Virus record (IMG/VR): IMGVR_UViG_3300031951_000003
Coordinates: 62,001-126,000 of that record
Reading direction: 5' to 3' (one strand)
DNA length: 64,000 bases
The notes beneath the pieces were generated by a model. That model was not told the origin of the DNA and did no database searches. It saw only the letters and a list, made by a program, of their open reading frames with translations. The stretch's first letter is position 1. Every line of letters starts with the position of its first letter. This document shows positions 17,415-32,534 of this stretch, in pieces. The position numbers and the translations under genes are program-made.

Positions 17415-18626
17415 ATGCCCAAAATTAACGTATTAGTTGTCCCATCAGATAGAACAGGTGTTGGCAAATTTAGGTCTGTAGACCCTCACATTTTTCTACA
17501 AAATTTATATCCTGAAGAGTTTCATGTCGATATTATATATGAAGTTCCGTATAACGATGATTCTTTTTGGAAGAAATACCAAATAGTTGCGTTCCATAGA
17601 AGTTTAGGTGCTGATTTCGAAAAAGCCTATGAATTGATTCCGAGATTGAAATCAATGGGAATTAAAACAATATGTGACATCGATGACTATTGGATGCCAG
17701 GTAAGGAACACCCAATCCACGATGTAATAAGATTCAACAAAATAAATGAGAAAATTACAAACAATCTCAAAGTCGCCGAATTTGTTACAACAACTACCTC
17801 AATATTTGCAGACGAAATAAAAAAATTGAACAAAAACGTTTTCGTTTTTCCAAACGCAATTAACCCAACAGAATCACAATTTAAGGAACCAACACCTGAA
17901 TCAGACAGATTACGAGTAGGTTGGCTTGGAGGTTCTTCTCATCTACACGACCTACAGTTGTTAGACCAATCATTCAGTAAGTTATCTAAACTTTCAGACA
18001 AACTACAGTTTGTAATTTGTGGATTTGACACAAGAGGAACAATAACTGAAATCAACCAACAAACAGGAGAACATAAAAAAAGAAACATATTACCACACGA
18101 AACTGTTTGGGCTAATTACGAAAAAATATTCACACAAGATTTCTCTATTGTATCCGAAGAATATAAAAATTATCTTTTGAAATACTCTCAAGAATCTTAC
18201 CCTGAAGAAAACAAAGAATCATATATCAGAGTCTGGACCAAACCAGTTCAGTCATATGCAAAAAACTATTCAAAGTTCGACATATCTTTAGCACCAATTA
18301 AAAATCATATGTTCAACAGAATGAAATCTCAACTTAAAGTAATTGAGGCTGGTTTTTACAAAAAAGCAATAATTGCTTCTAACTTAGGTCCTTATACAAT
18401 AGATTTAAAACACGCTTTAAAAAATGGAGAATTTACAGACGGTAATGCTCTTTTAGTTGAAGAAAATAGAAATCATTCAGATTGGGCTAAGTTTATAGAA
18501 AAATTAGAAAAAAATAGAAATTGGGTTACCGATTTAGGTGAAAGGTTGTATGAAACCGTGAAGGACAAATATGATTTGAACATAGTCACCAAACATAGAG
18601 CAGAGTTTTATAAATCTATATTATGA
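17415..18626 (+). CDS. GT-B (GT4-like) glycosyltransferase
   Basis: DIDDYW, VGWLGGSSH and DISLAPI...KSQLKVIEAG...IIASNLGPY are typical of phage GT4-like enzymes. Confidence 0.8.
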   Translation: MPKINVLVVPSDRTGVGKFRSVDPHIFLQNLYPEEFHVDIIYEVPYNDDSFWKKYQIVAFHRSLGADFEKAYELIPRLKSMGIKTICDIDDYWMPGKEHPIHDVIRFNKINEKITNNLKVAEFVTTTTSIFADEIKKLNKNVFVFPNAINPTESQFKEPTPESDRLRVGWLGGSSHLHDLQLLDQSFSKLSKLSDKLQFVICGFDTRGTITEINQQTGEHKKRNILPHETVWANYEKIFTQDFSIVSEEYKNYLLKYSQESYPEENKESYIRVWTKPVQSYAKNYSKFDISLAPIKNHMFNRMKSQLKVIEAGFYKKAIIASNLGPYTIDLKHALKNGEFTDGNALLVEENRNHSDWAKFIEKLEKNRNWVTDLGERLYETVKDKYDLNIVTKHRAEFYKSIL

Positions 18627-19324
18627 TAAACATTCCACTTAGTAAGATTCTTTTTTTAGATATCGAAACCGTTGGAGTCCAACCCAATTGGGATTCCTTG
18701 GTAAAAAACCAACCAGCGTTGTCTTTCCAATTTGAAAACTATTTTGATTGGTTTCAAAAAAGATTCCCAGAAGATGCGGACAAACCAATCGGTGATATGT
18801 TCGTCAATAGAGCGGCACTTGTCCCTGAGTTTGCAAGAATTGCATGTATAAGTGTTGCATTTGTGACCGAACAAGGTAACACACGAATGCAATCTTTCAG
18901 TGACCCTGATGAGAAAAAGATATTATTTGAAGTTCAGAAACTTTTACAAAAAGTTGGGGAGTTAGGTTTTTTTCTTTGTGGACATAATGTAAAAGGTTTT
19001 GACATTCCAATGTTGGCTAAAAGAATGATTATAAACGGTTTTCAACCACCAAAGATATTACCAGGACACGATACGAAACCTTGGGAAATAAAGGCTTTTG
19101 ACACTAAGGAATTTTGGCAATACGGTGGCTATGGCTCAATTGCATCCTTGGAACTTATGTGTGTATGTTTGGGTGTAGAATCTTCGAAGACCATGGAAAT
19201 TACAGGTAATAAGGTTCATGACGCTTTTTGGGTAAAAAAAGATATTGAAGGTATTGTAAAATATTGTGAGAAAGATGTGTCTGTATTAATTGATGTAATT
19301 AAAAAAATTCAAAAACTTAAATAA
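18623..19324 (+). CDS. PolB-like 3'-5' exonuclease (DEDD)
   Basis: FLDIETV, GHNVKGFDIP and YCEKDV motifs. Confidence 0.85.
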   Translation: MINIPLSKILFLDIETVGVQPNWDSLVKNQPALSFQFENYFDWFQKRFPEDADKPIGDMFVNRAALVPEFARIACISVAFVTEQGNTRMQSFSDPDEKKILFEVQKLLQKVGELGFFLCGHNVKGFDIPMLAKRMIINGFQPPKILPGHDTKPWEIKAFDTKEFWQYGGYGSIASLELMCVCLGVESSKTMEITGNKVHDAFWVKKDIEGIVKYCEKDVSVLIDVIKKIQKLK

Positions 19325-19325
19325 C

Positions 19326-19931
19326 ATGCAAAAAAAAGATGAAGAACTTCTGAAAGAAATCATGGAACAATTCCAAAGGATAAAGGATGAGGTAGGTATG
19401 GAACCTGATGAGAATTACCAACGTGAGTTGGAAGATTTATTTGGGATGTCCATGGAACAAATGAATGCCGACGCAACAATTGCATTACAGACACAAACGG
19501 TTGAGATTGAACTAATTCATGAGGACGCAATCTTTCCATCATATAACTACCCAACTGATTCAGGATTTGATTTATATTCTGTTGATGAAATGACCTTAGA
19601 ACCATTTGGAAGAGGTTTGGTTTCTACTGGTCTAAAGTTCAATTTCGAAGAGGGATATGAAATACAAATAAGAACCAAAAGTGGATTAGCAGTTAATCAA
19701 GGTTTAATGGTCTTAAACTCGCCAGGCACCGTAGACCAAGGATACACAGGGGAAATAAAAGTGCCTGTTTTTAATGCAAACCCAACCAAATTTACAATCT
19801 CAAAAAACATGAAAGTTGCTCAAGCAGTTCTTTGTCCTGTGAAAAACGGAAGATTTGTCAATTTAGTTCCTGTTGATGAGATTGGTCAAAAAGACAGGGG
19901 AGACAATGGTTTTGGAAGCACAGGAATTTAA
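19326..19931 (+). CDS. dut: Trimeric dUTPase with an acidic N-terminal extension
   Basis: SGFDL, RTKSG, GTVDQGYTGEIKV and RGDNGFGSTG motifs. Confidence 0.95.
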   Translation: MQKKDEELLKEIMEQFQRIKDEVGMEPDENYQRELEDLFGMSMEQMNADATIALQTQTVEIELIHEDAIFPSYNYPTDSGFDLYSVDEMTLEPFGRGLVSTGLKFNFEEGYEIQIRTKSGLAVNQGLMVLNSPGTVDQGYTGEIKVPVFNANPTKFTISKNMKVAQAVLCPVKNGRFVNLVPVDEIGQKDRGDNGFGSTGI

Positions 19932-19941
19932 ATTTTTGATA

Positions 19942-20112
19942 ATGGGAAAATACTACGAAAATCTGGACACTTTGATTGAATTAATCAAAAAACTAGAGAG
20001 GAAACATTTGCTCGCTGAGTTTATTTTGGATTGCATCCAAATATCCAAAATTGACCCCAACAAAACACCACACGAAATTATAAAAGAAGCAAAGAAAAAA
20101 AGATTAGGATAA
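19942..20112 (+). CDS. Small hypothetical protein (likely start MGKYY)
   Basis: Fills the gap between dut and the next glycosyltransferase. Confidence 0.5.
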   Translation: MGKYYENLDTLIELIKKLERKHLLAEFILDCIQISKIDPNKTPHEIIKEAKKKRLG

Positions 20113-21740
20113 TGATAACAGTTGGTTATTCAAGCAGAGAACACAAGCCTGAATTTATAGAATATTTAAAAAAGTCATCAGGATACAAAAAAATTAACGT
20201 TATTGAAAAAATAAATAACGGAGAAAAATCATTGGCTCAAGTTTATAACGAAATTCTGAAAGAATCAGAAACTGATATTATCGTATTTTGTCATGATGAC
20301 ATTTATTTCGATACAAACTCCTGGTATTCCAAAATCACTAAACATTTCGAAAAAACCGACTATGGTATTATCGGTATGGCAGGAACAACATCTATGCCCG
20401 CGAGTGGAAAATGGTGGGAGGATAGAAGAAAAATGATAGGAATTGTTAATCACGAAAGTGGAGGAAAAAAATGGGAATCAAAATACTCGGAATCAATTGG
20501 TAGTTCGGTGACTCCTGTGATTGTCTTGGACGGTGTTTTCATTGCTGTCAGTAAAAGTCGAATTAAGAAAAACTTCAATGAAGAATTCGAAGGATTTCAT
20601 TTCTATGATATCCCATTTTGTTTTGAAAACTTTATGGAAGGTGTTAAGATTGGAGTAATCACAAATATAAGAATAACTCACAAATCAATCGGTGCCACCA
20701 ATGACCAATGGGAAAAAAATAGACAGTTATTCGAAACCAAATACAGCCAAAACCTACCTGTCAAAATACCATATGATACTCAAAGAAAAATTAGAGTTTT
20801 ATTGAGTTGTTTATTTTTTAAAACTTTTACCGGTTCTGAATTATACGTTTATGAATTAGCACAAAAATTACAAAAATTGGGTTGTGATGTTACAATCATG
20901 TCTCAAATAGGTGGAGTGTTAACCGATATGGCAAAAAGACAAGGTATCAAGGTTATAAGTTTCGAACAAGCGCCTGGTTTTAAATTGGGTGACGGGAAAT
21001 GGGGATTTACAACGGAAAAAGGATTTCAACCTTCTACACCAAATATGATGTATAGAGTTACAGAGGCGCCATTCGATATTATTCATATGCAACACAAACC
21101 TGTTGCGGAAAGGATGATTCAATTCTATCCTGAGGTTGAAAAAGTTTATTCGATACATTCTGAAGTCATTGAATTAGAAAATCCAATCAAACATGAATCT
21201 ATAAAAAAATACATTGCAATCAGACCTGAAATAAAAAATTATATGATTGAAAATTTTCAGATTTCTGAAAATGAGATTGAAGTGATTTATAACCCTATAG
21301 ATGAAAACAAATTTGTTACTAAGAATGTAAAAAAAGAAAACGCGATATTGTTTGTTGGGACTATAGATTATCTTAGAAGAGAAACAATAATGGATTTGAT
21401 TGACTACACAAAAGAAAATGAAAAGGAACTTTGGATTGTTGGAGAGGATAAATCGAATTATCTTCCACAAATTCTTTTGAATTCACACGTCAAGCATTTC
21501 CCACCAACTTGGAATGTTGAAAGTTTTATAAATAGATGTTCAGAGACAGCCGGAATACAATTGGGTAGAACAACAATAGAGGGTTGGTTATGCCAGAAAC
21601 CAGGTTGGATATATAAGGTAGATTCGAATGGATTTATTATTTCTAAAGAACTTTATCAAGTTCCCGATGACGTTGAGAAATACCACAGTAGTAAAGTAAG
21701 TGAAAAAATAAAAAATATATACAGAGAAGTTTTATCATGA
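20112..21740 (+). CDS. Fused glycosyltransferase (GT2-like N-terminal plus GT4-like C-terminal)
   Basis: DIIVFCHDDIYF and FHFYDIPFC in the N-terminal half; TGSELYVYELA and ILFVGTIDYLR in the C-terminal half. Confidence 0.8.
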   Translation: MITVGYSSREHKPEFIEYLKKSSGYKKINVIEKINNGEKSLAQVYNEILKESETDIIVFCHDDIYFDTNSWYSKITKHFEKTDYGIIGMAGTTSMPASGKWWEDRRKMIGIVNHESGGKKWESKYSESIGSSVTPVIVLDGVFIAVSKSRIKKNFNEEFEGFHFYDIPFCFENFMEGVKIGVITNIRITHKSIGATNDQWEKNRQLFETKYSQNLPVKIPYDTQRKIRVLLSCLFFKTFTGSELYVYELAQKLQKLGCDVTIMSQIGGVLTDMAKRQGIKVISFEQAPGFKLGDGKWGFTTEKGFQPSTPNMMYRVTEAPFDIIHMQHKPVAERMIQFYPEVEKVYSIHSEVIELENPIKHESIKKYIAIRPEIKNYMIENFQISENEIEVIYNPIDENKFVTKNVKKENAILFVGTIDYLRRETIMDLIDYTKENEKELWIVGEDKSNYLPQILLNSHVKHFPPTWNVESFINRCSETAGIQLGRTTIEGWLCQKPGWIYKVDSNGFIISKELYQVPDDVEKYHSSKVSEKIKNIYREVLS

Positions 21741-22447
21741 TTATTCTAACCACCACTTTTAACTGCGAACAATTCATTGAAAGGTGTTTGTTGAGTATAA
21801 TGGGTCAAAAATTCAAAGATTTTATATGTTACATAACTGATGATTTATCTACGGATAAAACTAGAGAAATCATCAAAAGGACTATATCTGACGACCCAAG
21901 GTTTATTCTTATTGAAAATCATATCAAGTTTTATCAACCAGGCAACTACGACCAAATAATAAGATGGAGAGGTATTGAAGGGGAAGAAATCTGTGTTGAG
22001 ATTGATGGAGACGATTGGTTACCAAACTCACAAGTTCTGTCCAATATTGCAAAAGTCTATGAAGATAAAAATGTTTGGATGACAAGTGGTTCGTTCAAGT
22101 ATCATGACGGAAGACCAGGTTTTGCAAATCCACCTACGACAAATGTAGATGTAAGAAAACAAGTTTTCACCCTTTCTCACATGAGAACATGGAAATCTTG
22201 GCTTTGGAAAAAAATTGACGAAAAAGACTTGAGAGACGACAAAGGTAACTATTGGGATGTTGCTGGTGACCTATCTTTTATGTTTCCGATGTTTGAAATG
22301 TCAGGTATGGAACATTATAGATTTTTGACCGACATAAATTATATTTACAATGAATCTAACCCACTCAATGACCATAAAGTCAATATGAACAAGGTTATTG
22401 AAACGGTCAATAAAATCAGAAACAAAACCCCCTACACAAAACTATGA
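21737..22447 (+). CDS. GT2 family glycosyltransferase
   Basis: ILTTTFNCEQFIERCL, DDLSTDKT and VEIDGDDW. Confidence 0.85.
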   Translation: MIILTTTFNCEQFIERCLLSIMGQKFKDFICYITDDLSTDKTREIIKRTISDDPRFILIENHIKFYQPGNYDQIIRWRGIEGEEICVEIDGDDWLPNSQVLSNIAKVYEDKNVWMTSGSFKYHDGRPGFANPPTTNVDVRKQVFTLSHMRTWKSWLWKKIDEKDLRDDKGNYWDVAGDLSFMFPMFEMSGMEHYRFLTDINYIYNESNPLNDHKVNMNKVIETVNKIRNKTPYTKL

Positions 22448-23091
22448 GTTTTGATTCAAGTATAGAAAACATTATTTTGGAAATTAACCAAACAAAAAAA
22501 ATAGACAACATCCTCCACATCGGAGCGTGTTTAGGTGAAGAAGTAACTTTTTACAACAGACTCAATCCAAAAAAAGTTTACTGGTTCGAACCAAACCCAA
22601 AACTATTGAGCCAATTAGAAAAAAACCTTGCAGGATATAATTTTGAAAACTCATTATTTCCCTATGCGGTAAGCAATAAGAAAGGAGTTGCTAGTTTCAA
22701 CATAATTGAAAACACATCGAAAACAAACCCAGGATGTTCATCCCTTCAGGATTTGAAAATCCACTTGGAACTTTATCAAGATATACAGAAAGTTGATACT
22801 TGCCAAGTTAATACAATCAACATAGATGAATTCATTTCTGAAAATAATTTAGAGTCTAATTTCGATTTAGTCAGTCTTGATACACAAGGACATGATTTTG
22901 AAATACTTAATTCGAGTGAATTAATTTTTAATGCGAATATAATAGTAATTGAGACGGCTAAAGTAGAATTATACGAAGGTCAGAAAATTGACACAGAAAT
23001 AGATTCATTAATGGAGTCCAAGGGATTTCATAAAAAATACTATCACCAATTTCATAGTGTTTGGGGTGATACTCTATATGTAAAAAATTAA
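22444..23091 (+). CDS. FkbM family SAM-dependent methyltransferase
   Basis: LHIGACLGEE, WFEPNP and LDTQGHDFEIL. Confidence 0.85.
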   Translation: MSFDSSIENIILEINQTKKIDNILHIGACLGEEVTFYNRLNPKKVYWFEPNPKLLSQLEKNLAGYNFENSLFPYAVSNKKGVASFNIIENTSKTNPGCSSLQDLKIHLELYQDIQKVDTCQVNTINIDEFISENNLESNFDLVSLDTQGHDFEILNSSELIFNANIIVIETAKVELYEGQKIDTEIDSLMESKGFHKKYYHQFHSVWGDTLYVKN

Positions 23092-23092
23092 A

Positions 23093-23923
23093 GTGATGTC
23101 GAATTTAATATCAGCACACCTTATGGGTGGATTAGGAAATCAATTGTTTGAGGCTGCACACGCTTTAGCTCAAGGCTGGAAACACAACAGAGAGGTAAAA
23201 TTCTTTCCTGATTCTTGGACACCAGGTCAAGGGAGAAATGCTAAAAATTACATCGATAACGTATTCAGAAACTTGGAATTTTCAGATAAGATTGAAGGTT
23301 TTACACACGTATATGAAGGACCTTTCGAGTATTCTGAAGTGAATCCACTGGAAACCAATACCTCATTCTATGGATACTATCAAAGTTCCAAAAATTGGTT
23401 TGGATACGATGAAAAAATAAGAGATATTTTTCAACCTAACCCTGAATTGGTCGAAGAAATGAAATTAAAATATCCTCAATTATCCCAACCAAATACTTTA
23501 TCTCTCCACGTCAGAAGAAGTGAATATCTTCAATTCCCTGAGATTCACCCAACAATTAGTTTAGAGTATATTCAAGAAGCTCTAAAAGTAATTGGGGAAT
23601 ACTCAACAGTATTTGTTTTCAGTGATGACCACGATTTTGTTAAACAAAATTTAAATTTTCCAAGTGTAGTTTATGTAAATGAGTCTGAGGATTGGAGAGA
23701 ATTATACTTAATGGGACTCTGTCAAAATCACATAATATCAAACTCCACTTTTTCATGGTGGGGTGTATTTTTGAACAAAAACTTAAATAAAAAAATTGTC
23801 GCCCCATCTCGTTGGTTCGGTCCTAAAGGTCCTAATGCAAAGGATATCTACGAATCTTACTGGCACACTATAAATTGTGATTGGGTTGAGGGTGGAAGAT
23901 TAATTCCTCTAAAAAATGATTAA
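23093..23923 (+). CDS. GT11 alpha-1,2-fucosyltransferase-like protein
   Basis: GGLGNQLF, LHVRRSEY and HIISNSTFSWW signature motifs. Confidence 0.9.
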   Translation: MMSNLISAHLMGGLGNQLFEAAHALAQGWKHNREVKFFPDSWTPGQGRNAKNYIDNVFRNLEFSDKIEGFTHVYEGPFEYSEVNPLETNTSFYGYYQSSKNWFGYDEKIRDIFQPNPELVEEMKLKYPQLSQPNTLSLHVRRSEYLQFPEIHPTISLEYIQEALKVIGEYSTVFVFSDDHDFVKQNLNFPSVVYVNESEDWRELYLMGLCQNHIISNSTFSWWGVFLNKNLNKKIVAPSRWFGPKGPNAKDIYESYWHTINCDWVEGGRLIPLKND

Positions 23924-25153: not shown

Positions 25154-25156
25154 AAA

Positions 25157-25990
25157 ATGGAAAAAAAATTAATCAGGAAAGTATCAGATTGGTGGGGTGA
25201 ATATGATTGTTCATCAAACCGCAACATGCCAAAGTATATACAATGGCTATCTAGAGAAACTGAAACACCACACGAAGTTAGTGTATATGTTGATAACTAC
25301 ATTAAAGATTGGGGATTCAATGACCCATCAAGAGAAAAAATTGGATGGTTACTCGAATCACCACAGATGAATGAGCACACAATCAAATATCTCTTAGATA
25401 ATATTGACAAAACAAGGGAACATTATAAGTGGATATTCACTTGTATGGATAGTCTTGTCGAAATGGGTGCACCATTTGTTTACAATATATCAAATGCGGT
25501 TCCTTGGATTTGGGAAAGAAATAGAATGATACACCCAAAAACTAAACTTGTATCCATGATTGCATCCAATAAAGGATGGTTGAGGGGTCACCAAAACAGA
25601 CTACAATGGGTTGAGAGATTGAAAGATAAAGTGGACCTATTCGGTTCAGGCAGACCCCACCAAATAAACGATAAAGAGGATGGATTGAGAGATTATATGT
25701 TTTCAGTCTCAATTGAAAATGATAATTCTGACACATACTTCACAGAGAAACTTACAGATAATTTTGTTATGGGAACTGTCCCTGTATATTATGGTTCGAG
25801 GAAGGTCGTTGAGAAATACTTCGACCCAACAGGAGTAATATTCTTGGAGGATGACCCCGACTTGTCAAGTTTAACTGTAGAAAAATATCAGTCCATGATG
25901 CCCGCAATTGAAAGAAATTTCAAGAAAGCGTTGGAATTACCACTAGCAGAAGATTACATGTGGGAAAACTATCTTAAAAATTTATTCTAA
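25157..25990 (+). CDS. GT10 (alpha-1,3-fucosyltransferase)-like protein
   Basis: DYMFSVSIEN...YFTEKL...GTVPVYYG is the GT10 C-terminal motif. Confidence 0.75.
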   Translation: MEKKLIRKVSDWWGEYDCSSNRNMPKYIQWLSRETETPHEVSVYVDNYIKDWGFNDPSREKIGWLLESPQMNEHTIKYLLDNIDKTREHYKWIFTCMDSLVEMGAPFVYNISNAVPWIWERNRMIHPKTKLVSMIASNKGWLRGHQNRLQWVERLKDKVDLFGSGRPHQINDKEDGLRDYMFSVSIENDNSDTYFTEKLTDNFVMGTVPVYYGSRKVVEKYFDPTGVIFLEDDPDLSSLTVEKYQSMMPAIERNFKKALELPLAEDYMWENYLKNLF

Positions 25991-26805
25991 TGAAATATCT
26001 TGTTTTAGGCTCCGAAGGACAAATCGGAATGGAATTATGTAAATTCCTCAGAAACAAAGGGGAAACAGTAATAGAATTTGATAACGCTAAAATACCCAGT
26101 CAAGATTTAAGAATACCAAATATCATTGATGATTTGGTGATGGAATCTGATTTTGTGATGTTCTTGGCTTTTGATGTTGGTGGTTCAAGATATTTGAAAA
26201 AATATCAACACACATATGAATTTATTGAAAATAATACAAAGCTAACACTATACACTTTTGAAAGTTTGAAAAAACATAACAAACCTTTTATATTTGCATC
26301 ATCACAAATGGCAAATATGTCATATTCACCATATGGAGTTTGTAAAAGTTTAGGTGAGATTTTCTCAACTGCACTGAATGGAGTCACAGTCAAGTTTTGG
26401 AACGTGTATGGACCTGAACATGATTTGGAAAAATCACACGTTGTGACTGATTTCATATTAAAGGCTAAAAAAGGTCAAATTACAATGATGACCGATGGAA
26501 CAGAAGAAAGACAGTTTTTACATGCTGAGGATTGTTCAAATTGTTTGTATATTCTTTCACAAAAATATAATGAGATTGATAGGTCAAAAAACCTACACAT
26601 AACAAATTTTGAATGGAATACAATTTTAGAAGTTGCAAATATTATTCGTGAGACAATTCCTTGTGAAGTCATTCCTTCAACCGAAAAAGATTCTGTTCAA
26701 CTTAATAAAAAGAACGAACCCGACCCTTACATATTGAATTTTTGGAAACCTGAGATATCCTTGAAAGAGGGTATCAATAAAATTATAAATGAAATGACAA
26801 ATTAG
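25990..26805 (+). CDS. NAD-dependent epimerase/dehydratase (SDR)
   Basis: GSEGQIG Rossmann motif, ASS, YGVCK, FWNVYGP. Confidence 0.85.
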   Translation: MKYLVLGSEGQIGMELCKFLRNKGETVIEFDNAKIPSQDLRIPNIIDDLVMESDFVMFLAFDVGGSRYLKKYQHTYEFIENNTKLTLYTFESLKKHNKPFIFASSQMANMSYSPYGVCKSLGEIFSTALNGVTVKFWNVYGPEHDLEKSHVVTDFILKAKKGQITMMTDGTEERQFLHAEDCSNCLYILSQKYNEIDRSKNLHITNFEWNTILEVANIIRETIPCEVIPSTEKDSVQLNKKNEPDPYILNFWKPEISLKEGINKIINEMTN

Positions 26806-26806
26806 T

Positions 26807-27907
26807 ATGAAACAAAAAAAAGTAGTTGTTTTAGGTGGTGGAGGATTCATAGGGGGGCATTTGGCTAAAAGATTAAAAGAAGAAGGATGTCACGTTAGAA
26901 TATGTGATATAAAAAAACATGAATACTTTTTCCAAGATGAAATATGTGATGAATTTATTTTGGGTGATTTGACTGACCCAAAGGTTGTGGAATTGGTAAT
27001 CGAAGAAGGTGTTGACGAAATTTATCAGTTAGCTGCAGATATGGGGGGTGCTTTGTATATTTTCACAGGAGAACACGATGCAGATGTAATGTATAACTCA
27101 GCAATGATTAATCTCAATGTTGCAAGAGAATGTGTTAAGAAAAAAGTAGGAAAGGTTTTTTACTCTTCTTCTGCTTGTATGTATCCCGAGCACAATCAAT
27201 TAGACCCCAACAATCCAAATTGTGAAGAATCTTCAGCATATCCTGCAAATCCAGATTCGGAATACGGATGGGAAAAGTTATTCTCAGAGAGAGTATTCCT
27301 TTCATTTCATAGAAACTATGGACTCAATGTTAGAATAGCAAGATTTCATAATATTTTTGGACCTCAAGGAACTTGGAAAGGGGGTAGAGAAAAATCACCC
27401 GCAGCGATGTGTAGAAAAGCTGCAGAATCAAAAGACGGTGATGAGATAGAGGTTTGGGGAGAGGGTAATCAAACCCGTTCATTTCTTTATGTAGACGAAT
27501 GTGTAGAAGCTGTGTTAAGATTAATGAAGTCTGACTTTACCGGACCTGTCAACATAGGAAGTGAAGAAATGGTTTCAATCAACGAATTAGCAATTCTAGC
27601 AATCAATATTTCAGGTAAGAAATTAAAAGTCAAAAATATTGCAGGTCGAGAGTTTGAAAAAAAATACGGTTTCAAGTGTCCGTTGGGTGTTAAGGGAAGA
27701 AACTCAGACAACAAGTTATATAGAGAAAAAATTGGATGGGAAGTTAGTCAACCTTTAGAAGTTGGTATAAGAAAAACATATCAATGGATTAAATCTCAGG
27801 TTGATGACTATGAGACACAAACCCCTTGGATATATGAAACACCTGACAATGGTAAAACAGTTTATAGAAGAGAAATAAACAATCCAATTAGAAAAAAAAT
27901 TAAATAA
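26807..27907 (+). CDS. GDP-mannose 3,5-epimerase-like nucleotide-sugar epimerase
   Basis: GGGGFIGGH, LAADMGG, YSSSACMYP, YGWEK and REKSPAAMCRK are characteristic of the GME clade. Confidence 0.8.
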   Translation: MKQKKVVVLGGGGFIGGHLAKRLKEEGCHVRICDIKKHEYFFQDEICDEFILGDLTDPKVVELVIEEGVDEIYQLAADMGGALYIFTGEHDADVMYNSAMINLNVARECVKKKVGKVFYSSSACMYPEHNQLDPNNPNCEESSAYPANPDSEYGWEKLFSERVFLSFHRNYGLNVRIARFHNIFGPQGTWKGGREKSPAAMCRKAAESKDGDEIEVWGEGNQTRSFLYVDECVEAVLRLMKSDFTGPVNIGSEEMVSINELAILAINISGKKLKVKNIAGREFEKKYGFKCPLGVKGRNSDNKLYREKIGWEVSQPLEVGIRKTYQWIKSQVDDYETQTPWIYETPDNGKTVYRREINNPIRKKIK

Positions 27908-27908
27908 A

Positions 27909-28295
27909 ATGATAAATGTCCCTGTTAGTGTCGGAGAGTTAATTGATAAACTTTCCATCCTTCAAGTAAAAAAGACAAAAGTAAAAAATACAGAAAAACT
28001 TGAATACATCAAAAAGGAATTCGAGTTACTTTACAACTTGTCTTCAGAATATTTGAACGATATGACAATTGAAAATTTATACCACGATTTGGTAAACACA
28101 AACTCAAATCTGTGGGAAATTGAGGATAGACTCAGAGTTTTGGAACTTGAAAGTAAATTCGAGGGTGAGTTTATAGATTTGGCTAGAAAAGTGTATATCA
28201 CAAACGACAGAAGATTCGAATTGAAAAACGAAATCAATTCAATCACTTCATCTGAAATAAGAGAAGTAAAAGAATATGTGAACTACAAAAGATAA
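27909..28295 (+). CDS. DUF6165-like protein
   Basis: VPVSVGELIDKLSILQVK...LWEIED...VYITNDRR...K. Confidence 0.75.
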   Translation: MINVPVSVGELIDKLSILQVKKTKVKNTEKLEYIKKEFELLYNLSSEYLNDMTIENLYHDLVNTNSNLWEIEDRLRVLELESKFEGEFIDLARKVYITNDRRFELKNEINSITSSEIREVKEYVNYKR

Positions 28296-28311
28296 AAATT
28301 AAATTTATACA

Positions 28312-29046
28312 ATGGCAAAAACGACGAGAAAGTTGAGTGGAACGACCGCTCAGAGAGATGAGGCACAAATAAAAACAAAGAAAGACTTAATTTGTTCGAT
28401 AGTAAAAAAGAAAACCAAACAAAAATTTTTATCTGAAAATCAAAAAATATATTACGACACACTTTTAAATAATCAAATTACAATCTGTTCAGGACCAGCA
28501 GGTGTTGGTAAAAGTTATGTTGCAATGAAATGTGCAATAGACTTACTTTCTGACCCTCTAACTCCTTTCGAAAAGATTATCATCGTCAGACCGGCGGTGG
28601 AGGCAGAAGAAAAATTAGGTAGTTTACCTGGTGGCGTTGAAGAAAAGTTAGACCCATACATTTTTCCATCATACTATCTTTTGAATAAAATAATAGGTAA
28701 AGAGACGAGAGAAAAACTTAAGGAAGCTGAAGCTATTGAGGTCTTTGCATTAGCTTATATGAGAGGTATGAATATTGATAATTCAATACTCATTTTCGAA
28801 GAAGCTCAAAACTCAACTCCGAGTCAAATGAAATTATTATTGACAAGAATAGGATTCAATTCGAAATTTTTCATATCAGGGGATTTGGAACAATTTGACA
28901 GACATAAAGATAAAACACAAACAGGTTTATGGGACGTGATTAGAAGATTCGATGACATTGAAGATGTTGGCATTTTCGAATTCAAACCTTATGATGTAGT
29001 TAGAAATCCATTGATTTCGAAAATATTAAAAAAATACGAACAATGA
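28312..29046 (+). CDS. phoH: PhoH family ATPase
   Basis: GPAGVGKS P-loop, RPAVEAEEKLGSLPG, YMRG, EEAQN, LLTRIG and GDLEQ. Confidence 0.95.
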   Translation: MAKTTRKLSGTTAQRDEAQIKTKKDLICSIVKKKTKQKFLSENQKIYYDTLLNNQITICSGPAGVGKSYVAMKCAIDLLSDPLTPFEKIIIVRPAVEAEEKLGSLPGGVEEKLDPYIFPSYYLLNKIIGKETREKLKEAEAIEVFALAYMRGMNIDNSILIFEEAQNSTPSQMKLLLTRIGFNSKFFISGDLEQFDRHKDKTQTGLWDVIRRFDDIEDVGIFEFKPYDVVRNPLISKILKKYEQ

Positions 29047-29636
29047 GAATTGGAATCGAAATAAATGGAGTTTTAAGAGACACCTTAAAAAAGATTCAAG
29101 AAGTTTATGAGAAGTGGTTTATAGAAAATCGTTTCGATGATGACGAAGAACCTAAAGGTGAAGTTTTTTCAGAATTGAATTCCTTAGAAATTATGAAACA
29201 TCTTAAATTTAAAGATGAAGATGAATTATATAATTTCTTATACAAAGAGTATACTATGGAAATATTCGGTCATGCCGGTTCTAAGGAATATAACGGTATG
29301 AATGATTTTAATGATTTTTATTTGGACATGAGAGAAGAACATGATATTATTGTTGTTTCTGACGAAATAGGAAAATCGAAACCAGCTTCTTTATTTTTTC
29401 TATCCAAGTTCGGATGTCTTACAGAAAACGTCAAATTTTATAGTGAATCTACAATAAATTATCTTTGGGACAGCGTAGACGTTTTACTTACTGCAAATCC
29501 AAACCTATTATTAAATCATCCTTCTAATGTGGAAGTCATTAAATATGAAACGTCATACAATAAGGATATAAATACAAACCATTCAATTCAGTCGATAGGA
29601 GAATTGAAATCAAAATTGAACAAACTTTATGATTAG
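29043..29636 (+). CDS. HAD-fold 5'(3')-deoxyribonucleotidase-like protein with a degenerate catalytic motif
   Basis: MRIGIEINGVLRD in place of the canonical IGIDIDGVL. Confidence 0.55.
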   Translation: MRIGIEINGVLRDTLKKIQEVYEKWFIENRFDDDEEPKGEVFSELNSLEIMKHLKFKDEDELYNFLYKEYTMEIFGHAGSKEYNGMNDFNDFYLDMREEHDIIVVSDEIGKSKPASLFFLSKFGCLTENVKFYSESTINYLWDSVDVLLTANPNLLLNHPSNVEVIKYETSYNKDINTNHSIQSIGELKSKLNKLYD

Positions 29637-29910
29637 TGTTTTAGGTGAAACTTATTATATCGATTTGGATAAAGTCGAAAATTATTTAGACATGTCCAAT
29701 GATGAAAACTACGAGCCACTTTCAGGAACATCTGAAATGAGAATAAATGTTATTAAATTTGAACTCATAAAATTATTATTAGAAACTGTTCTATCAGAAC
29801 AGGAACCTCTCGAAGATAAGTTAGGTTTAAACAATCCGAAGAACGTTAGTATACCGTTCAAATTGGCATTTAATACCTTACTAAACAAAAAATTAATAAA
29901 TCATTATTGA
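29629..29910 (+). CDS. Hypothetical protein (93 aa)
   Basis: Coupled ORF in the operon. Confidence 0.65.
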   Translation: MISVLGETYYIDLDKVENYLDMSNDENYEPLSGTSEMRINVIKFELIKLLLETVLSEQEPLEDKLGLNNPKNVSIPFKLAFNTLLNKKLINHY

Positions 29911-29911
29911 T

Positions 29912-30961
29912 ATGCAGGCACCAGTAAAAGAAAAATTAGAAATTTCAATCAAAAATTTGGAAGACAAAAAAGCCAGAATTTATTTTTTGGTTCAAGATAC
30001 CAAAAACAACGCTAAAGCTTCTGTTAGATTTATCTATCAAGTTGCAAAAACCCTTTTGGATAATGGATTCAATCCAATCATTTTACATGAAAAGAAAGAT
30101 TACTTAGGTGTAAATTGGATGGGTGAGGAATACATGAAGATTCCTCATAAAACAATTGAAGGTGAGAATTTAGAAATTTCTCCCGAAGACTTTTTGGTAA
30201 TCCCCGAGATATTTGGATACGTTATGGAGCAAGTTAAACAATTGCCATGTGCTAAAATTGTTATAACTCAACAATATGCTCACATGTTAGAAACTCTCAA
30301 TCCAGGTCAATCGTGGTCACAGTTTGGATTTTACAAATGTATAACTACCAATTTCAAACAAAAAGAATATATCGAGAAGGTAATGAGACAATCCTCAATT
30401 GATGTTTTGAAACCTTATATAAATGATAAGTTCCAACCAAAAAATTTACCACCAATGCCGATTATTGGTATTCACACCAAAGAACAATCTGATGCGGTGA
30501 ACATAATCAAAACTTTTTATCTCAGGTTTCCACAATATAGATGGTTTACCTTCCGAGACTTAAGAGGGTTGTCGGAAACAGAATTTGCAAACTCTTTGAA
30601 AGAATGTTTTGTCAGCGTTTGGATTGACGATAAGAGTGGATTTGGAACATTTCCTTTAGAATCCATGAAATGTGGTGTTCCTTGTATTGGCAAAATTCCA
30701 GATTTGATGCCCGATTGGATGAACGAAGACAATGGGATATGGATTACAGACCAAACATTATTCCCTGATGTATTAGCAGATTTTGTTCAAAATTGGTTGG
30801 AGGATAACATCAAACCTGAACTTTACGAACAATTTCAAAAAACAGCAGAAACTTTCTCAAATAAACAAGAGTTTGAAGAGAACGCAGTTGAACTATTTCA
30901 ATCGTATCTAACCACAAGAGCAAACTCATTTAAAGAACAAATGTCAAAAACAGAAAACTAA
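29912..30961 (+). CDS. GT-B (GT4-like) glycosyltransferase
   Basis: DFLVIPEIFG; FVSVWID..SGFGTFPLESMKCGVPCIG C-terminal motif. Confidence 0.75.
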   Translation: MQAPVKEKLEISIKNLEDKKARIYFLVQDTKNNAKASVRFIYQVAKTLLDNGFNPIILHEKKDYLGVNWMGEEYMKIPHKTIEGENLEISPEDFLVIPEIFGYVMEQVKQLPCAKIVITQQYAHMLETLNPGQSWSQFGFYKCITTNFKQKEYIEKVMRQSSIDVLKPYINDKFQPKNLPPMPIIGIHTKEQSDAVNIIKTFYLRFPQYRWFTFRDLRGLSETEFANSLKECFVSVWIDDKSGFGTFPLESMKCGVPCIGKIPDLMPDWMNEDNGIWITDQTLFPDVLADFVQNWLEDNIKPELYEQFQKTAETFSNKQEFEENAVELFQSYLTTRANSFKEQMSKTEN

Positions 30962-30962
30962 T

Positions 30963-31769
30963 ATGGAAAACAAATTTTCAGTATCTGTAATATTACCTAT
31001 CAAATCTTCTAAAGCAAAAGACTTTGAAGAGTATTTTAATAAAGCAATCAATTCAATCAAAAATCAGTCTGTAGAGCTAGAGGAAATTCTAATCGTTCAT
31101 TCAATTGAAGAATCACTTCAAGAATTTTTGAAAAGTTATAATTTCGAAAATCTGAATGTAAAATTATTAGAGTGGAGTCAAAAACCTAATTACTGTTCTC
31201 AAGTCAACTTCGGAATTAAAAATGCGAAAGCAACTTGGATTTCTCTTTTTGAATTTGATGATGAATACTCAAATATTTGGTTCAAAAATGTAAAGAAATA
31301 CGCTGAATCATATCCTGATGTTCAGATGTTCTTACCAGTAGTTGTCGAAGTGGACGAAAAAGGGACCTTCGCTGGTTTCACAAATGAAGCAACGTTTGCG
31401 GCAAACTTTACACAAGAAATGGGATTCTTGACAAATGACACACTTCAAGATTATCAGAACTTCCAAACCGCAGGGTCAGTATTCAAAAAATCTTTGATTG
31501 ATGATTTTGGTGGTTTCAAACCCTCAATCAAACTCACTTTTATTTATGAGTTCCTTTTGAGACTTACGTATAATTCAGTTTCTATTATGACTATACCCAA
31601 ACTTGGTTACAAACACGTTAACCTTAGAGAGGGTTCAATATTTTGGAATTACAAAAATGGTGATTCGAAAATGTTAGAAGATGAAGTTAAGTTTTGGCTA
31701 CAGACAGCCAAGAAAGAATATTTCTTTACTGACGACAGAGTCATAAAATATGAATCACCAAATGCGTAA
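30963..31769 (+). CDS. GT2 family glycosyltransferase
   Basis: VSVILPI, VNFGIKNA and FEFDDEY. Confidence 0.8.
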   Translation: MENKFSVSVILPIKSSKAKDFEEYFNKAINSIKNQSVELEEILIVHSIEESLQEFLKSYNFENLNVKLLEWSQKPNYCSQVNFGIKNAKATWISLFEFDDEYSNIWFKNVKKYAESYPDVQMFLPVVVEVDEKGTFAGFTNEATFAANFTQEMGFLTNDTLQDYQNFQTAGSVFKKSLIDDFGGFKPSIKLTFIYEFLLRLTYNSVSIMTIPKLGYKHVNLREGSIFWNYKNGDSKMLEDEVKFWLQTAKKEYFFTDDRVIKYESPNA

Positions 31770-32515: not shown

Positions 32516-32534
32516 TGAAAAAGTATTTATTGAT

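What the first reader, a model, noticed from the sequence alone, without database searches (positions are those of the whole stretch)
17415..31769. Second ~14-kb glycan-building cluster with about 7 glycosyltransferase genes, epimerases and methyltransferases
Seen: GT4-like x2, a GT2+GT4 fusion, GT2 x2, GT11, GT10-like, FkbM, TylF x2, an SDR epimerase and a GME-like epimerase, interleaved with exonuclease, dUTPase, PhoH and a HAD-like gene. No flippase, polymerase, undecaprenyl-phosphate initiator or membrane protein is visible. Together with the left cluster this gives 11 GT genes. Inference: the lack of a lipid-carrier pathway argues for a cytoplasmic acceptor, either the virion mucin-like proteins or phage DNA, rather than host capsule or O-antigen conversion.
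Basis: partly seen in the sequence, partly recalled or inferred. Interest (0 to 1): 0.75.

Follow-up and report, generated by a model that had tools for sequence, protein, structure and literature searches.

The report
Jumbo-phage glycan-building gene island
A complete 321-kb freshwater jumbo phage carries a real 14-kb block of soluble sugar-building enzymes whose middle part is swapped between relatives like a bacterial serotype locus. It most likely coats the phage's own threonine/proline-rich fibre proteins with sugars, but this has not been shown experimentally.

Summary
Window 17415-31769 holds 19 co-directional genes: 7 glycosyltransferase (GT) genes, 3 sugar-type methyltransferases, a short SDR and a true GDP-mannose 3,5-epimerase (GME). 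Exonuclease, dUTPase, PhoH and a weak nucleotidase-like gene are interleaved.

The genome is a complete 321-kb T4-like freshwater phage, probably of Bacteroidota. It has about 14 GT genes in four loci and 9 Thr/Pro-rich proteins. No Wzx, Wzy, WecA, Bac_transf or GtrA was found, and no protein has more than 4 hydrophobic segments.

The cluster is a conserved backbone with a recombination hot spot between dUTPase and PhoH. In relatives this island is 3.4 to over 9.6 kb and holds other GTs, methyltransferases and sugar-nucleotide enzymes. It never holds membrane machinery.

Best reading (about 0.5): cytoplasmic O-glycosylation of the phage's fibre-like Thr/Pro-rich proteins. Support:
- a GT60-like gene follows such a protein gene in 69 of 80 related loci;
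- a core GT resembles Agt/AmGGT, whose Agt homologues extend peptide-linked glycans;
- cultured phage XacN1 has homologues of the left cluster and Schiff-positive virion proteins.

DNA glycosylation is unlikely: ThyA is canonical and there is no TET/JBP. Host-envelope remodelling remains a serious rival. The closest known kind is the cyanomyovirus "LPS" clusters.

The parts
14747..14754 (+). Promoter-like motif TATTTATA 16 nt before the first gene (14770) of the + strand block that runs into the cluster
   Evidence: In sense orientation it lies within 60 nt upstream of 45 genes, which is 45 of its 81 occurrences in the genome. These genes include the portal gene and three Thr/Pro-rich genes. 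There is none inside 17415-31769.
17415..18626 (+). GT-B (GT4-like) glycosyltransferase candidate, 403 aa
   Evidence: Sub-threshold Pfam Glyco_trans_1_4 hit. Foldseek on a low-confidence model finds only GT4 enzymes.
18623..19324 (+). PolB-exo-like 3'-5' exonuclease (backbone gene)
   Evidence: PF10108, 48 bits.
19326..19931 (+). dUTPase (backbone gene; left anchor of the variable island)
   Evidence: PF00692, 82 bits. Used as anchor in 39 related loci.
20112..21740 (+). Two-domain glycosyltransferase: Glyco_tranf_2_5 plus GT4 N-domain, 542 aa
   Evidence: PF13712-type GTs are the commonest island element in relatives, 11 of 90 proteins.
21737..22447 (+). GT2 glycosyltransferase
   Evidence: PF00535, 59.6 bits.
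22444..23091 (+). FkbM-family methyltransferase
   Evidence: PF05050, 71 bits.
23093..23923 (+). GT11 (alpha-1,2-fucosyltransferase family) enzyme
   Evidence: PF01531, 73 bits. GT11 motifs are present.
23916..25153 (+). Tandem pair of TylF-like O-methyltransferases (23916-24548 and 24545-25153)
   Evidence: PF05711, 26 bits, for the first. The two are 59% identical.
25157..25990 (+). GT10-like (alpha-1,3-fucosyltransferase family) enzyme
   Evidence: PF00852, 48.7 bits. ENxxxxxYxTEK motif present.
25990..26805 (+). Short (271 aa) SDR nucleotide-sugar epimerase/reductase of a virus-typical kind
   Evidence: PF01370, 86 bits. Nearest clusters in the Atlas are viral.
26807..27907 (+). GDP-mannose 3,5-epimerase (would make GDP-L-galactose / GDP-L-gulose)
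   Evidence: PDB 2c59, E 2e-97, catalytic segments conserved. 56-59% identical to genes in large cyanomyoviruses. 82-84% identical to Kaistella/Chryseobacterium.
27909..28295 (+). DUF6165 protein, last gene of the variable island
   Evidence: PF19662, 39.6 bits.
28312..29046 (+). PhoH (backbone gene; right anchor of the island)
   Evidence: PF02562, 210 bits.
29043..29910 (+). Nucleotidase/HAD-like gene (weak hit) and a 93-aa unknown gene, both backbone
   Evidence: NT5C at 16.6 bits, below cut-off. Present in 79-80 of 80 PhoH-centred loci.
29912..30961 (+). Core GT-B glycosyltransferase related to Agt/AmGGT
   Evidence: Profile against PDB 8xsg, E 1.9e-16 (PMC12159676). Present in 79 of 80 PhoH-centred loci.
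30963..31769 (+). Core GT2 glycosyltransferase
   Evidence: PF00535, 38.8 bits. Present in 79 of 80 PhoH-centred loci.
3176..7733 (-). Left cluster: HtrL_YibB-like 557 aa, HtrL-like 294 aa, GT25, and a PF11397 (GT60-like GlcNAc-transferase family) gene at 6459-7733
   Evidence: Three of the four are conserved as a block in XacN1 and Xoo-sp13.
7804..9822 (-). Thr/Pro-rich 672-aa protein directly upstream of the GT60-like gene; proposed acceptor
   Evidence: 39 [TS]P[TS] motifs. A gene of this kind sits in the same place in 69 of 80 related loci. It has the TATTTATA motif upstream.
10788..14717 (-). Thr/Pro-rich 1309-aa modular protein: conserved N-terminal lectin-like domain, Thr/Pro linkers, C-terminal LamG-like end. 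Proposed fibre/adhesin and acceptor.
55168..56178 (-). Thr/Pro-rich 336-aa protein inside the head/packaging gene block
   Evidence: 23 motifs. Shares the promoter-like motif with the portal gene.

Best explanation
The region is the largest of four glycan-synthesis loci of a complete 321-kb T4-like freshwater jumbo phage, probably of a Bacteroidota host.

Structure. It is not one uniform operon-like cluster. It has a conserved backbone: exonuclease, dUTPase, PhoH, a nucleotidase-like gene, and an Agt-like GT-B plus GT2 pair. A recombination hot spot sits between dUTPase and PhoH. In this phage the hot spot carries a GT2_5-GT4 fusion, GT2, FkbM, GT11, two TylF-like methyltransferases, GT10, a short SDR, GDP-mannose 3,5-epimerase and DUF6165. 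All products are soluble.

Proposed mechanism (inferred):
1. The epimerase converts host GDP-mannose to GDP-L-galactose.
2. The fucosyltransferase-family GT10 and GT11 enzymes and the GT2/GT4 enzymes build a short, partly O-methylated oligosaccharide in the cytoplasm.
3. The acceptor is the phage's own Thr/Pro-rich 'mucin-like' tracts. Nine proteins have them, and several look like fibres or adhesins.
4. These tracts are probably primed by the conserved GT60-like GlcNAc-transferase of the left cluster and extended by the conserved core GTs.
5. The variable island supplies a strain-specific outer part, giving the virion a glycan coat that differs between relatives.

Shown here: the genes, their families, their solubility, the island's variability, and the absence of lipid-carrier and hydroxymethyl-pyrimidine machinery. 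Inferred: the sugars, the order of steps, the acceptor and the biological role.
For: Gene families and solubility.

Genome-wide absences: Bac_transf, WecA-type, Wzx, Wzy, GtrA and polytopic membrane proteins.

Thr/Pro-rich proteins:
- There are nine, with 13-87 [TS]P[TS] motifs each and no signal or membrane segments.
- A Thr/Pro-rich gene of very variable length (207-946 aa) lies directly upstream, on the same strand, of the 85-100% conserved GT60-like gene in 69 of 80 related contigs. None lies downstream.
- The family that Pfam describes for PF11397 carries out cytoplasmic GlcNAc transfer to a protein, Skp1 (224 bits).

Core GT 29912-30961 matches AmGGT. Its Agt homologues extend sugars on glycopeptides (PMC12159676).

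Cultured jumbo phage XacN1 shares the GT60-like gene (49% identity), the HtrL-like gene (41%) and the 294-aa gene (31%). It has at least two Schiff-positive virion proteins, and its DNA is cut by BssHII, NaeI and SpeI (PMC5852040).

The 1309-aa protein:
- Its N-terminal 625 aa are 76-92% conserved in the 120 best of 1090 homologues (E <= 1e-5), while the rest varies in length and domains.
- It folds as lectin-like jelly rolls that resemble S-PM2 virion structural proteins.

Three Thr/Pro-rich genes, the portal gene and the head of the cluster's gene block share the TATTTATA promoter-like motif.

Island turnover:
- The island is 3.4 to over 9.6 kb in 39 loci.
- 90 island proteins fall into 60 families, dominated by GTs, methyltransferases and sugar-nucleotide enzymes.
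- Backbones that are 99.3-99.4% identical share only 41% of island DNA.
Against: No glycan has been observed on any protein of this phage, and the phage is uncultured.

Within this genome, the adjacency of Thr/Pro-rich genes to GT genes is not beyond chance (2 of 6 units, p about 0.13).

The conserved pairing in relatives could be inherited synteny, because those relatives are close. In XacN1 and Xoo-sp13 none of the genes annotated within 8 kb is large or fibre-like, but their Thr/Pro content was not examined.

GT9, GT25, HtrL, GT10 and GT11 are classical LPS/O-antigen families.

The epimerase is 82-84% identical to one in a bacterial Wzx/EpsG/Bac_transf polysaccharide locus.

The homologous cyanophage clusters are conventionally read as host-surface genes (PMC12801897).

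The core GT 29912-30961 found no relative in cultured-phage records. The epimerase's cultured-phage relatives are cyanomyoviruses with no reported virion glycoproteins, and the other focal GT genes were not searched. The XacN1 evidence therefore bears on the left cluster only.

Virion membership of the Thr/Pro-rich proteins rests on weak fold matches (TM 0.2-0.3) and on domain architecture.
Confidence: 0.5

Rival explanations
1. Host-envelope remodelling. The soluble phage GTs and sugar-nucleotide enzymes act during infection on the host's own lipid-linked intermediates (Und-PP-linked O-units, capsule units or lipid A-core). They rely on the host's initiator, flippase and polymerase. The effect would be to change the infected cell's surface, for example for superinfection exclusion or to avoid trapping of progeny.
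For: - GT9, GT25, HtrL_YibB, GT10, GT11, GT2 and GT4 are typical LPS/O-antigen families.
- The epimerase is 82-84% identical to the gene inside a Kaistella locus with Wzc-like kinase, Wzx, EpsG, GT2, GT4, DegT and Bac_transf. This shows gene flow with host polysaccharide loci.
- The closest cultured-phage relatives of the epimerase lie in cyanomyovirus clusters that are interpreted as cell-wall modification genes (PMC12801897).
- Cytoplasmic-face GTs need no membrane segments, so the absence of phage-encoded carriers does not exclude this reading.
Against: - No initiator, flippase or polymerase occurs in this genome or in 12 alternative islands, whereas the bacterial locus has all of them within 6 kb.
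- A host flippase and polymerase would have to accept many different foreign units.
- It does not explain the nine Thr/Pro-rich proteins, the pairing of the GT60-like gene with a Thr/Pro-rich gene, or the Agt-like core GT.
- XacN1 shows virion glycoproteins.
Confidence: 0.25
2. Split targets. The conserved left cluster (GT60-like, GT25, HtrL-like) glycosylates virion proteins. The variable island of the focal cluster serves something else: host glycans, a free oligosaccharide, or another phage product.
For: - Only left-cluster genes are shared with XacN1, the phage with Schiff-positive virions.
- The focal island's gene flow is with bacterial polysaccharide loci and cyanophage clusters.
- The two clusters are on opposite strands.
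Against: - The core Agt-like GT and the GT2 lie in the focal cluster and are as conserved as the left cluster (79 of 80 loci).
- The + strand block holding the focal cluster is headed by the same promoter-like motif as the portal and Thr/Pro-rich genes.
- One shared acceptor is the more economical reading.
Confidence: 0.12
3. DNA hypermodification. The GTs glycosylate modified bases in phage DNA, as in T4 glucosyl-hmC, TET-associated GTs or the oligosaccharide-like thymidine adduct of YerA41. This would protect the DNA from host nucleases.
For: - The clusters sit among DNA and nucleotide genes: PolB, exonuclease, dUTPase, PhoH and a nucleotidase-like gene.
- There is a weak, sub-threshold TAGT hit (E 0.0068) in the 557-aa HtrL-like protein.
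- A precedent exists for bulky sugar-like DNA adducts in a large-capsid, jumbo-like phage (YerA41; PMC9023294).
Against: - The only thymidylate-synthase-family gene is a canonical ThyA. It scores 236 bits against bacterial ThyA and has Asn in the PFNIASY motif.
- There is no TET/JBP.
- Seven to fourteen GTs, an epimerase and three O-methyltransferases far exceed known DNA-glycosylation sets.
- The exact genome is recovered at even depth by ordinary Illumina metagenomes in more than 20 samples.
- DNA of XacN1, which has the homologous left cluster, is cut by three restriction enzymes.
Confidence: 0.06

Closest known systems
'LPS / cell-wall' gene clusters of large T4-like cyanomyoviruses (P-SSM2, S-SSM7, S-SCSM1, S-SCSM2R)
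   Same: Both are clusters of soluble GT2, GT10, GT11, GT25 and GT1 enzymes plus nucleotide-sugar epimerases and methyltransferases in T4-like phages of about 200 kb or more. The epimerase here is 56-59% identical to theirs. S-SCSM2R has 13 GTs (PMC12801897) and this phage has about 14. The function is unproven in both.
   Different: This phage is a distant freshwater lineage, probably of Bacteroidota. The cyanophage gene is annotated as a UDP-glucose 4-epimerase or generic epimerase, whereas here it is shown to be GME-like. This work also shows a fixed hot spot with gene-content turnover, nine Thr/Pro-rich proteins, and a conserved pairing of a GT60-like gene with a Thr/Pro-rich gene. The papers read here do not describe these features.
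Virion glycosylation in cultured phages: Xanthomonas jumbo phage XacN1 (Schiff-positive virion proteins) and mycobacteriophages (Freeman et al. 2023, as cited in PMC12619734)
   Same: Phage-encoded soluble GTs are proposed or shown to glycosylate structural proteins in the cytoplasm. XacN1 shares three left-cluster genes at 31-49% identity.
   Different: XacN1 was credited with only two GTs, and the mycobacteriophages with a few. The mycobacteriophage sites are the C-termini of capsid and tail-tube proteins, not long Thr/Pro tracts. No nucleotide-sugar pathway, variable island or comparable scale is known there. The core GT 29912-30961 has no relative in cultured-phage records.
Giant-virus glycosylation machinery (chlorovirus capsid glycans; Megavirinae fibril glycosylation clusters)
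   Same: These are virus-encoded, host-independent cytoplasmic glycosylation systems. They use sugar-nucleotide enzymes, multi-domain GT and GT-methyltransferase proteins, and clade-specific gene clusters that decorate surface fibrils (PMC10117803, PMC9614988). HtrL_YibB-like proteins are common in Nucleocytoviricota. The 1229-aa FkbM+GT1+GT9 fusion elsewhere in this genome recalls the multi-domain chlorovirus enzymes (from my own knowledge).
   Different: Those are eukaryotic viruses with no demonstrated common descent with this cluster. This is a tailed phage, and its glycans have not been observed.
Bacterial cytoplasmic O/N-glycosylation of repeat adhesins (NGT/Agt system; serine-rich-repeat protein GtfA/B loci)
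   Same: Soluble GTs modify Ser/Thr- or Asn-rich repetitive surface proteins before export. A priming enzyme is followed by variable extending GTs. Core GT 29912-30961 is homologous to AmGGT/Agt (PMC12159676).
   Different: No NGT or GtfA/B homologue was identified here. The proposed priming enzyme belongs to a different family (PF11397). The products would leave the cell by lysis as virion parts, not by secretion.
Wzx/Wzy-dependent O-antigen or capsule loci of Bacteroidota
   Same: The enzyme families are the same, and gene content is hypervariable between conserved flanks. The epimerase is 82-84% identical.
   Different: The defining lipid-carrier steps (initiating phosphoglycosyl transferase, flippase, polymerase, chain-length regulator) are all absent from the phage.

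Membership tests
Wzx/Wzy-dependent polysaccharide (O-antigen/capsule) locus | Initiating phosphoglycosyl transferase (Bac_transf or WecA/MraY type) | tested here: not met
   PF02397 and PF00953 have no match in the complete genome at E <= 1, while the control genomes match.
Wzx/Wzy-dependent polysaccharide (O-antigen/capsule) locus | Flippase (Wzx) and polymerase (Wzy/EpsG), both polytopic membrane proteins | tested here: not met
   PF01943 and PF04932 are absent. No predicted protein has more than 4 hydrophobic segments. EpsG was not searched by its family model.
Wzx/Wzy-dependent polysaccharide (O-antigen/capsule) locus | Clustered GTs with nucleotide-sugar synthesis genes, variable between conserved flanks | tested here: met
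Serotype-converting phage Gtr system (GtrA/GtrB/GtrC) | GtrA-type small flippase and a membrane-anchored GT2 acting on bactoprenol phosphate | tested here: not met
   PF04138 is absent. The focal cluster's GT2-type proteins lack a terminal membrane anchor: the only hydrophobic stretch is one internal, borderline segment in the 542-aa fusion. The fourth GT2, at genome 234050-235297, has fewer than two segments.
Phage DNA glycosylation (T4 alpha/beta-GT on hmC; TET-associated GTs) | A pathway that makes a hydroxymethyl-pyrimidine acceptor (dCMP/dUMP hydroxymethylase, or TET/JBP dioxygenase) | tested here: not met
   The single TS-family gene is ThyA-like with Asn in PFNIASY. Tet_JBP is absent. 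Other routes to modified bases were not searched.
Phage DNA glycosylation (T4 alpha/beta-GT on hmC; TET-associated GTs) | A GT of a DNA-glycosylating family (TAGT, T4 AGT/BGT) | tested here: inconclusive
   There is only a sub-threshold TAGT hit (16.8 bits against a 27.5 cut-off, E 0.0068) in the 557-aa HtrL-like protein. The T4 AGT and BGT families were not searched separately.
Phage/virus-encoded virion protein glycosylation | Virus-encoded soluble GTs with no dependence on lipid carriers | tested here: met
Phage/virus-encoded virion protein glycosylation | Glycans demonstrated on virion proteins | not testable with these tools
   The phage is uncultured. The only evidence is indirect, through XacN1, which shares three left-cluster genes and has Schiff-positive virion bands.
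Phage/virus-encoded virion protein glycosylation | Plausible acceptor proteins that are virion components | tested here: inconclusive
   - Nine Thr/Pro-rich proteins have no export signals.
- One lies in the head gene block.
- Three share a promoter-like motif with the portal gene.
- The N-terminal domain of the 1309-aa protein gives weak fold matches to S-PM2 virion proteins.
- No proteome is available.
Cyanomyovirus-type 'LPS' gene clusters | Clustered GT2/GT10/GT11/GT25 and sugar-nucleotide epimerase genes in a large T4-like phage, with homologous members | tested here: met
   T4-like MCP, portal and TerL. The epimerase is 56-59% identical to S-SSM7, P-TIM68 and S-SCSM2R. The gene families match Table 1 of PMC12801897.
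GDP-mannose 3,5-epimerase (gene 26807-27907) | Full-length similarity to characterised GME with the catalytic Cys, Tyr-x-x-x-Lys and Lys segments | tested here: met
   E 2e-97 to Arabidopsis GME over residues 4-335. The SSAC, YGxEK and GGREK segments are conserved. The residue roles are recalled from the GME literature. Activity was not tested.
'Moraphages' (PMC12619734) | Heat-shock genes (DnaK/DnaJ) reported in all members; freshwater jumbo phages with predicted Bacteroidota hosts and several core GTs | tested here: inconclusive
   There is no HSP70 match in the genome, which argues against membership. Habitat, probable host phylum and GT richness agree. No moraphage sequences were available for comparison.

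The most novel reading that the evidence does not exclude
A widespread family of freshwater jumbo phages builds mucin-type O-glycan coats on its own Thr/Pro-rich fibre proteins entirely in the host cytoplasm. A conserved GT60-like GlcNAc-transferase would prime the proteins. A 'serotype island' would diversify the coat by swapping GT, methyltransferase and sugar-nucleotide genes, some exchanged with the capsule or O-antigen loci of Bacteroidota hosts. Phages would then have glyco-serotypes, perhaps mimicking host surface glycans, in parallel with giant viruses.
Probability: 0.3. Interest if true: 0.8.

Novelty: new variant of a known kind. Interest (0 to 1): 0.55.

Why it matters
Large phages are known to carry many glycosyltransferases, but what they glycosylate is largely unknown. 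The default label 'LPS/cell-wall genes' has not been tested.

This phage family is abundant: hundreds of IMG/VR contigs, and the exact genotype in more than 20 lake metagenomes from 2019 to 2025. It offers a concrete, testable alternative, with named candidate acceptors, a candidate priming enzyme, a defined sugar pathway (GDP-mannose to GDP-L-galactose), and a hot spot whose turnover can be followed in natural populations.

If virion glycosylation is confirmed:
- Glycan coats would extend from giant viruses and a few mycobacteriophages to environmental jumbo phages.
- This would bear on adsorption, stability, protease resistance and recognition by hosts and grazers.
- It would caution against annotating such genes as host-surface auxiliary metabolic genes.

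Tried and rejected
- Megablast of the cluster against cultured and deposited phage records found nothing. tblastn of the core GT 29912-30961 found nothing either.
- PHROGs gave no function for the unknown backbone genes 29043-38279 or for the 294-aa gene.
- phmmer of the GT60-like protein against the PDB found nothing. The same was true for the 403-aa GT candidate.
- The AF2 model of the 403-aa protein is poor (pLDDT 56), so its GT-B assignment is tentative.
- A permutation test of adjacency between Thr/Pro-rich genes and GT genes inside this one genome was not significant, p 0.13-0.22. I therefore do not use single-genome adjacency as evidence.
- RNA evidence is negligible: one 169-nt contig at depth 2 in one metatranscriptome, inside the DUF6165 gene, and it could be DNA carry-over. 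No statement about expression is made.
- The T4 late-promoter word TATAAATA is enriched (16 against 5.8 expected). Most matches turned out to be the reverse complement of a sense-oriented TATTTATA motif, so calling it a T4-type late promoter was dropped.
- Membership of the 'moraphage' lineage could not be settled.
- Giant-virus origin was considered, given the 321-kb size and the GT clusters. It was rejected because of the HK97/T4-type capsid, portal and terminase genes.
- No complex prediction was run, because transient enzyme-substrate contacts on disordered tracts are outside what that test can judge.

Full report
**What the window is**

The window is bases 62001-126000 of a single 321,139-bp IMG/VR virus record. 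The record has terminal repeats and is rated 100% complete. GC is 35%, and the genome carries 24 tRNAs and a tmRNA.

The window itself holds a T4/HK97-type major capsid gene (41335-43146), a portal gene (47615-49453) and a large terminase gene (49491-51248). Their nearest deposited relatives are all below 46% identity: a 484-kb uncultured huge phage, Microcystis phage Mel-JY01, Flavobacterium phage 'immuto' and Rhodothermus phage RM378. This is therefore a tailed jumbo phage, not a giant eukaryotic virus.

Hundreds of related contigs exist in IMG/VR. The exact genotype, at 99% or more of sampled words, is held by more than 20 freshwater or lake metagenome runs from 2019 to 2025.

**Check of the observation**

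Positions 17415-31769 hold 19 co-directional, mostly overlapping genes.

- GT2_5 plus GT4-N fusion
- two GT2 genes
- GT11 and GT10
- FkbM and TylF
- two SDR genes
- PolB-exo-like exonuclease, dUTPase, PhoH and DUF6165

The second TylF-like gene has no Pfam hit but is 59% identical to the first.

Two 'GT4-like' genes are sub-threshold in Pfam:
- 29912-30961 is rescued by a profile match to the solved glucosyltransferase AmGGT, PDB 8xsg, E 1.9e-16.
- 17415-18626 is supported only tentatively, by GT4 fold matches to a poor model.

The 366-aa 'GME-like' gene is a genuine GDP-mannose 3,5-epimerase homologue, E 2e-97 to the Arabidopsis enzyme, with its catalytic segments conserved. The GT11 and GT10 proteins keep their family motifs.

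No cluster protein has a convincing membrane segment.

**The rest of the genome**

Two further glycan loci lie outside the window:
- Genome 314422-319717: a GT9 gene, a 1229-aa FkbM+GT1+GT9 fusion and another FkbM. They are divergent from three giant Thr/Pro-rich proteins, one of which has SprB repeats.
- Genome 231800-235297: UDP-galactopyranose mutase, a TPR protein and a GT2.

That makes about 14 GT genes in all. Nine proteins carry long Thr/Pro-rich tracts with 13-87 [TS]P[TS] motifs.

The following are absent from the complete genome, while control genomes match:
- Bac_transf, WecA/MraY-type, Wzx, Wzy_C and GtrA families
- any protein with more than 4 hydrophobic segments

**Anatomy from comparison with relatives**

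Among 80 PhoH-centred related loci, the genes downstream of PhoH are present in 78-80. These are the nucleotidase-like gene, a 93-aa gene, the Agt-like GT, a GT2 and unknown genes out to 38279. Only the 69-aa ORF at 35017-35226 is found in fewer, 74 of 80. The genes between dUTPase and PhoH are present in only 9-39.

In 39 loci with both anchors, that interval ranges from 3.4 to over 9.6 kb and carries different gene sets.

Ninety island proteins from 12 loci fall into 60 sequence clusters. Their Pfam census is dominated by these families:
- GT2, GT2_5, GT31, GT47 and RXYLT1-like glycosyltransferases
- three kinds of methyltransferase
- GDP-mannose dehydratase and epimerases
- UDP-glucose dehydrogenase
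- DegT aminotransferases and hexapeptide acyltransferases

Only 3 of the 90 have even one hydrophobic segment.

Island DNA turns over faster than the backbone. Pairs with a 99.3-99.4% identical 4.5-kb backbone share as little as 41% of the island. At 85-92% backbone identity the median shared fraction is 41%.

In one lake sample the exact phage sits at about 31-35x word depth. Related phages add depth only over the epimerase and PhoH, and one low-depth contig skips GT10 through the epimerase.

**Evidence on the acceptor: virion proteins**

- The left-cluster gene 6459-7733 scores 224 bits for PF11397. Pfam describes that family through the cytoplasmic Skp1 GlcNAc-transferase.
- The gene is 85-100% conserved in 80 related contigs. 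In 69 of them a Thr/Pro-rich gene lies directly upstream on the same strand, and in none downstream. That gene varies from 207 to 946 aa. Most exceptions are contigs that end within 1 kb, which suggests assemblies break in the repeats.
- The core GT 29912-30961 is homologous to AmGGT. Its Agt homologues extend glucose chains on glycopeptides made by a cytoplasmic protein-glycosylation system (PMC12159676).
- Three left-cluster genes are conserved as a block in cultured jumbo phages XacN1, Xoo-sp13 and Stenotrophomonas CM1/RAS14. They are the GT60-like gene (49% identity), the HtrL-like gene (41%) and the 294-aa gene (31%).
- XacN1 virions show at least two Schiff-positive protein bands, and its DNA is cut by BssHII, NaeI and SpeI (PMC5852040).
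- The N-terminal 625 residues of the 1309-aa Thr/Pro-rich protein are 76-92% conserved in the 120 best of 1090 homologues (E <= 1e-5). The remainder varies in length and in its lectin-type end domains, which is a receptor-binding-fibre architecture.
- Its model (pLDDT 79) gives weak matches to ConA-like lectin folds, to S-PM2 virion structural proteins and to toxin receptor-binding domains.
- A sense-oriented TATTTATA motif precedes 45 genes, accounting for 45 of its 81 genomic occurrences. These include the portal gene, three Thr/Pro-rich genes and the first gene (14770) of the block that contains the focal cluster.

**Evidence against DNA as the acceptor**

- The only thymidylate-synthase-family gene is a canonical ThyA.
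- There is no TET/JBP.
- The TAGT hint is sub-threshold.
- Ordinary Illumina libraries recover the genome evenly.

**Evidence that keeps the host-envelope rival alive**

- The phage epimerase is 82-84% identical to genes of Kaistella and Chryseobacterium, and 74-76% identical to those of Sediminibacterium and Flavobacterium MAGs.
- In Kaistella the gene sits in a textbook locus with a Wzc-like kinase, Wzx, EpsG, GT2, GT4, DegT and Bac_transf.
- This points to a Bacteroidota host, consistent with the SprB repeats. It also shows gene flow with host polysaccharide loci.
- Soluble O-unit and core GTs could use host carriers.
- The within-genome adjacency of Thr/Pro-rich genes and GT genes is not significant.
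- The conserved pairing could be inherited synteny among close relatives.

**Comparison with what is known**

The closest known kind is the 'LPS/cell-wall' clusters of large cyanomyoviruses. They share the family set and a 56-59% identical epimerase, and their function is also unproven.

Functionally, the best analogues are:
- phage virion glycosylation in XacN1 and in mycobacteriophages (the latter as cited in PMC12619734)
- clade-specific fibril glycosylation clusters of giant viruses (PMC10117803, PMC9614988)
- bacterial cytoplasmic glycosylation of repeat adhesins

The cluster fails the defining tests for a Wzx/Wzy locus, a Gtr system and known DNA-glycosylation systems.

**Verdict**

- The feature is real.
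- Virion-protein glycosylation is the best explanation at about 0.5. Host-envelope remodelling stands at about 0.25, split targets at about 0.12 and DNA at about 0.06.
- It is a new variant of a known kind, of moderate to high interest.

Noticed in passing
whole genome; in the window for example 14747-14754, 9836-9843, 49482-49489, 56191-56198, 63374-63381: A sense-oriented TATTTATA motif lies 5-40 nt before the start codon of 45 genes, which is 45 of its 81 genomic occurrences. It often follows a GC hairpin and T-run. It looks like a phage promoter class shared by the portal gene and several Thr/Pro-rich genes. It differs from the T4 late consensus TATAAATA.
   Followed up: partly
genome 305338-319717 (outside the window; L161, L162): A third glycan locus holds a GT9 gene, a 1229-aa FkbM+GT1+GT9 fusion and a second FkbM. 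It is divergent from three giant Thr/Pro-rich proteins (949, 456 and 1433 aa), one with SprB repeats typical of Bacteroidota adhesins.
   Followed up: partly
genome 231800-235297 (outside the window; L164): A fourth locus holds UDP-galactopyranose mutase (255 bits), a TPR protein and a 415-aa GT2. This suggests galactofuranose is among the sugars used.
   Followed up: no
window 31769-32515: This 248-aa protein is highly conserved (median 83% identity in relatives), basic at its N-terminus, and has no family match. Its profile gives only a non-significant hit (E 0.62) to T4 late sigma factor gp55. It is worth testing as the factor that reads the TATTTATA motif.
   Followed up: partly
window 41335-43146: Relatives align to the major capsid protein in two pieces that cover only 53-59% of it. 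It therefore seems to carry an insertion of roughly 250 residues, rich in Gly/Ser/Thr/Asn, which could be a surface domain.
   Followed up: no
genome 1-344 and 320796-321139: The terminal repeat that marks the record as complete lies inside a gene made of tandem 144-bp repeats encoding acidic Pro/Val/Glu/Asp-rich units. The 'direct terminal repeat' may therefore be an assembly overlap within a repeat rather than a true end.
   Followed up: no
window 63442-63835; genome 134989-140972: The phage encodes a tmRNA (tag AEEATVVA by ARAGORN). A block of 23 tRNA genes lies just beyond the window.
   Followed up: no
genome 143465-146729 (window coordinates 81465-84729, outside the window): Two tandem paralogues resemble the carbamoyltransferase that sits next to the GT60-like gene in XacN1 and Xoo-sp13 (30-33% identity). 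This may mean carbamoylated sugars.
   Followed up: no
window 58795-60810 and 16345-16749: There is a Lon-like ATP-dependent protease (phrog_4871, 819 bits). A small WYL-domain protein lies upstream of the cluster.
   Followed up: no
L252 (Kaistella rhinocerotis contig), 87-11726: A bacterial polysaccharide locus (Wzc-like kinase, Wzx, EpsG, GT2, GT4, GNAT, DegT, Bac_transf) carries an epimerase 82% identical to the phage's. This suggests recent exchange between the phage island and Bacteroidota capsule or O-antigen loci. Several short 'MAG' contigs with 74-76% matches (Sediminibacterium and others) may be mis-binned phage fragments.
   Followed up: partly
window 25166-27892, in lake metagenome run X3: One low-depth contig (depth about 2, against about 32 for the main genotype) joins 25166 to 27892 with 30 other letters in between. 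It therefore skips GT10, the short SDR and the epimerase. This is a co-occurring island variant.
   Followed up: no
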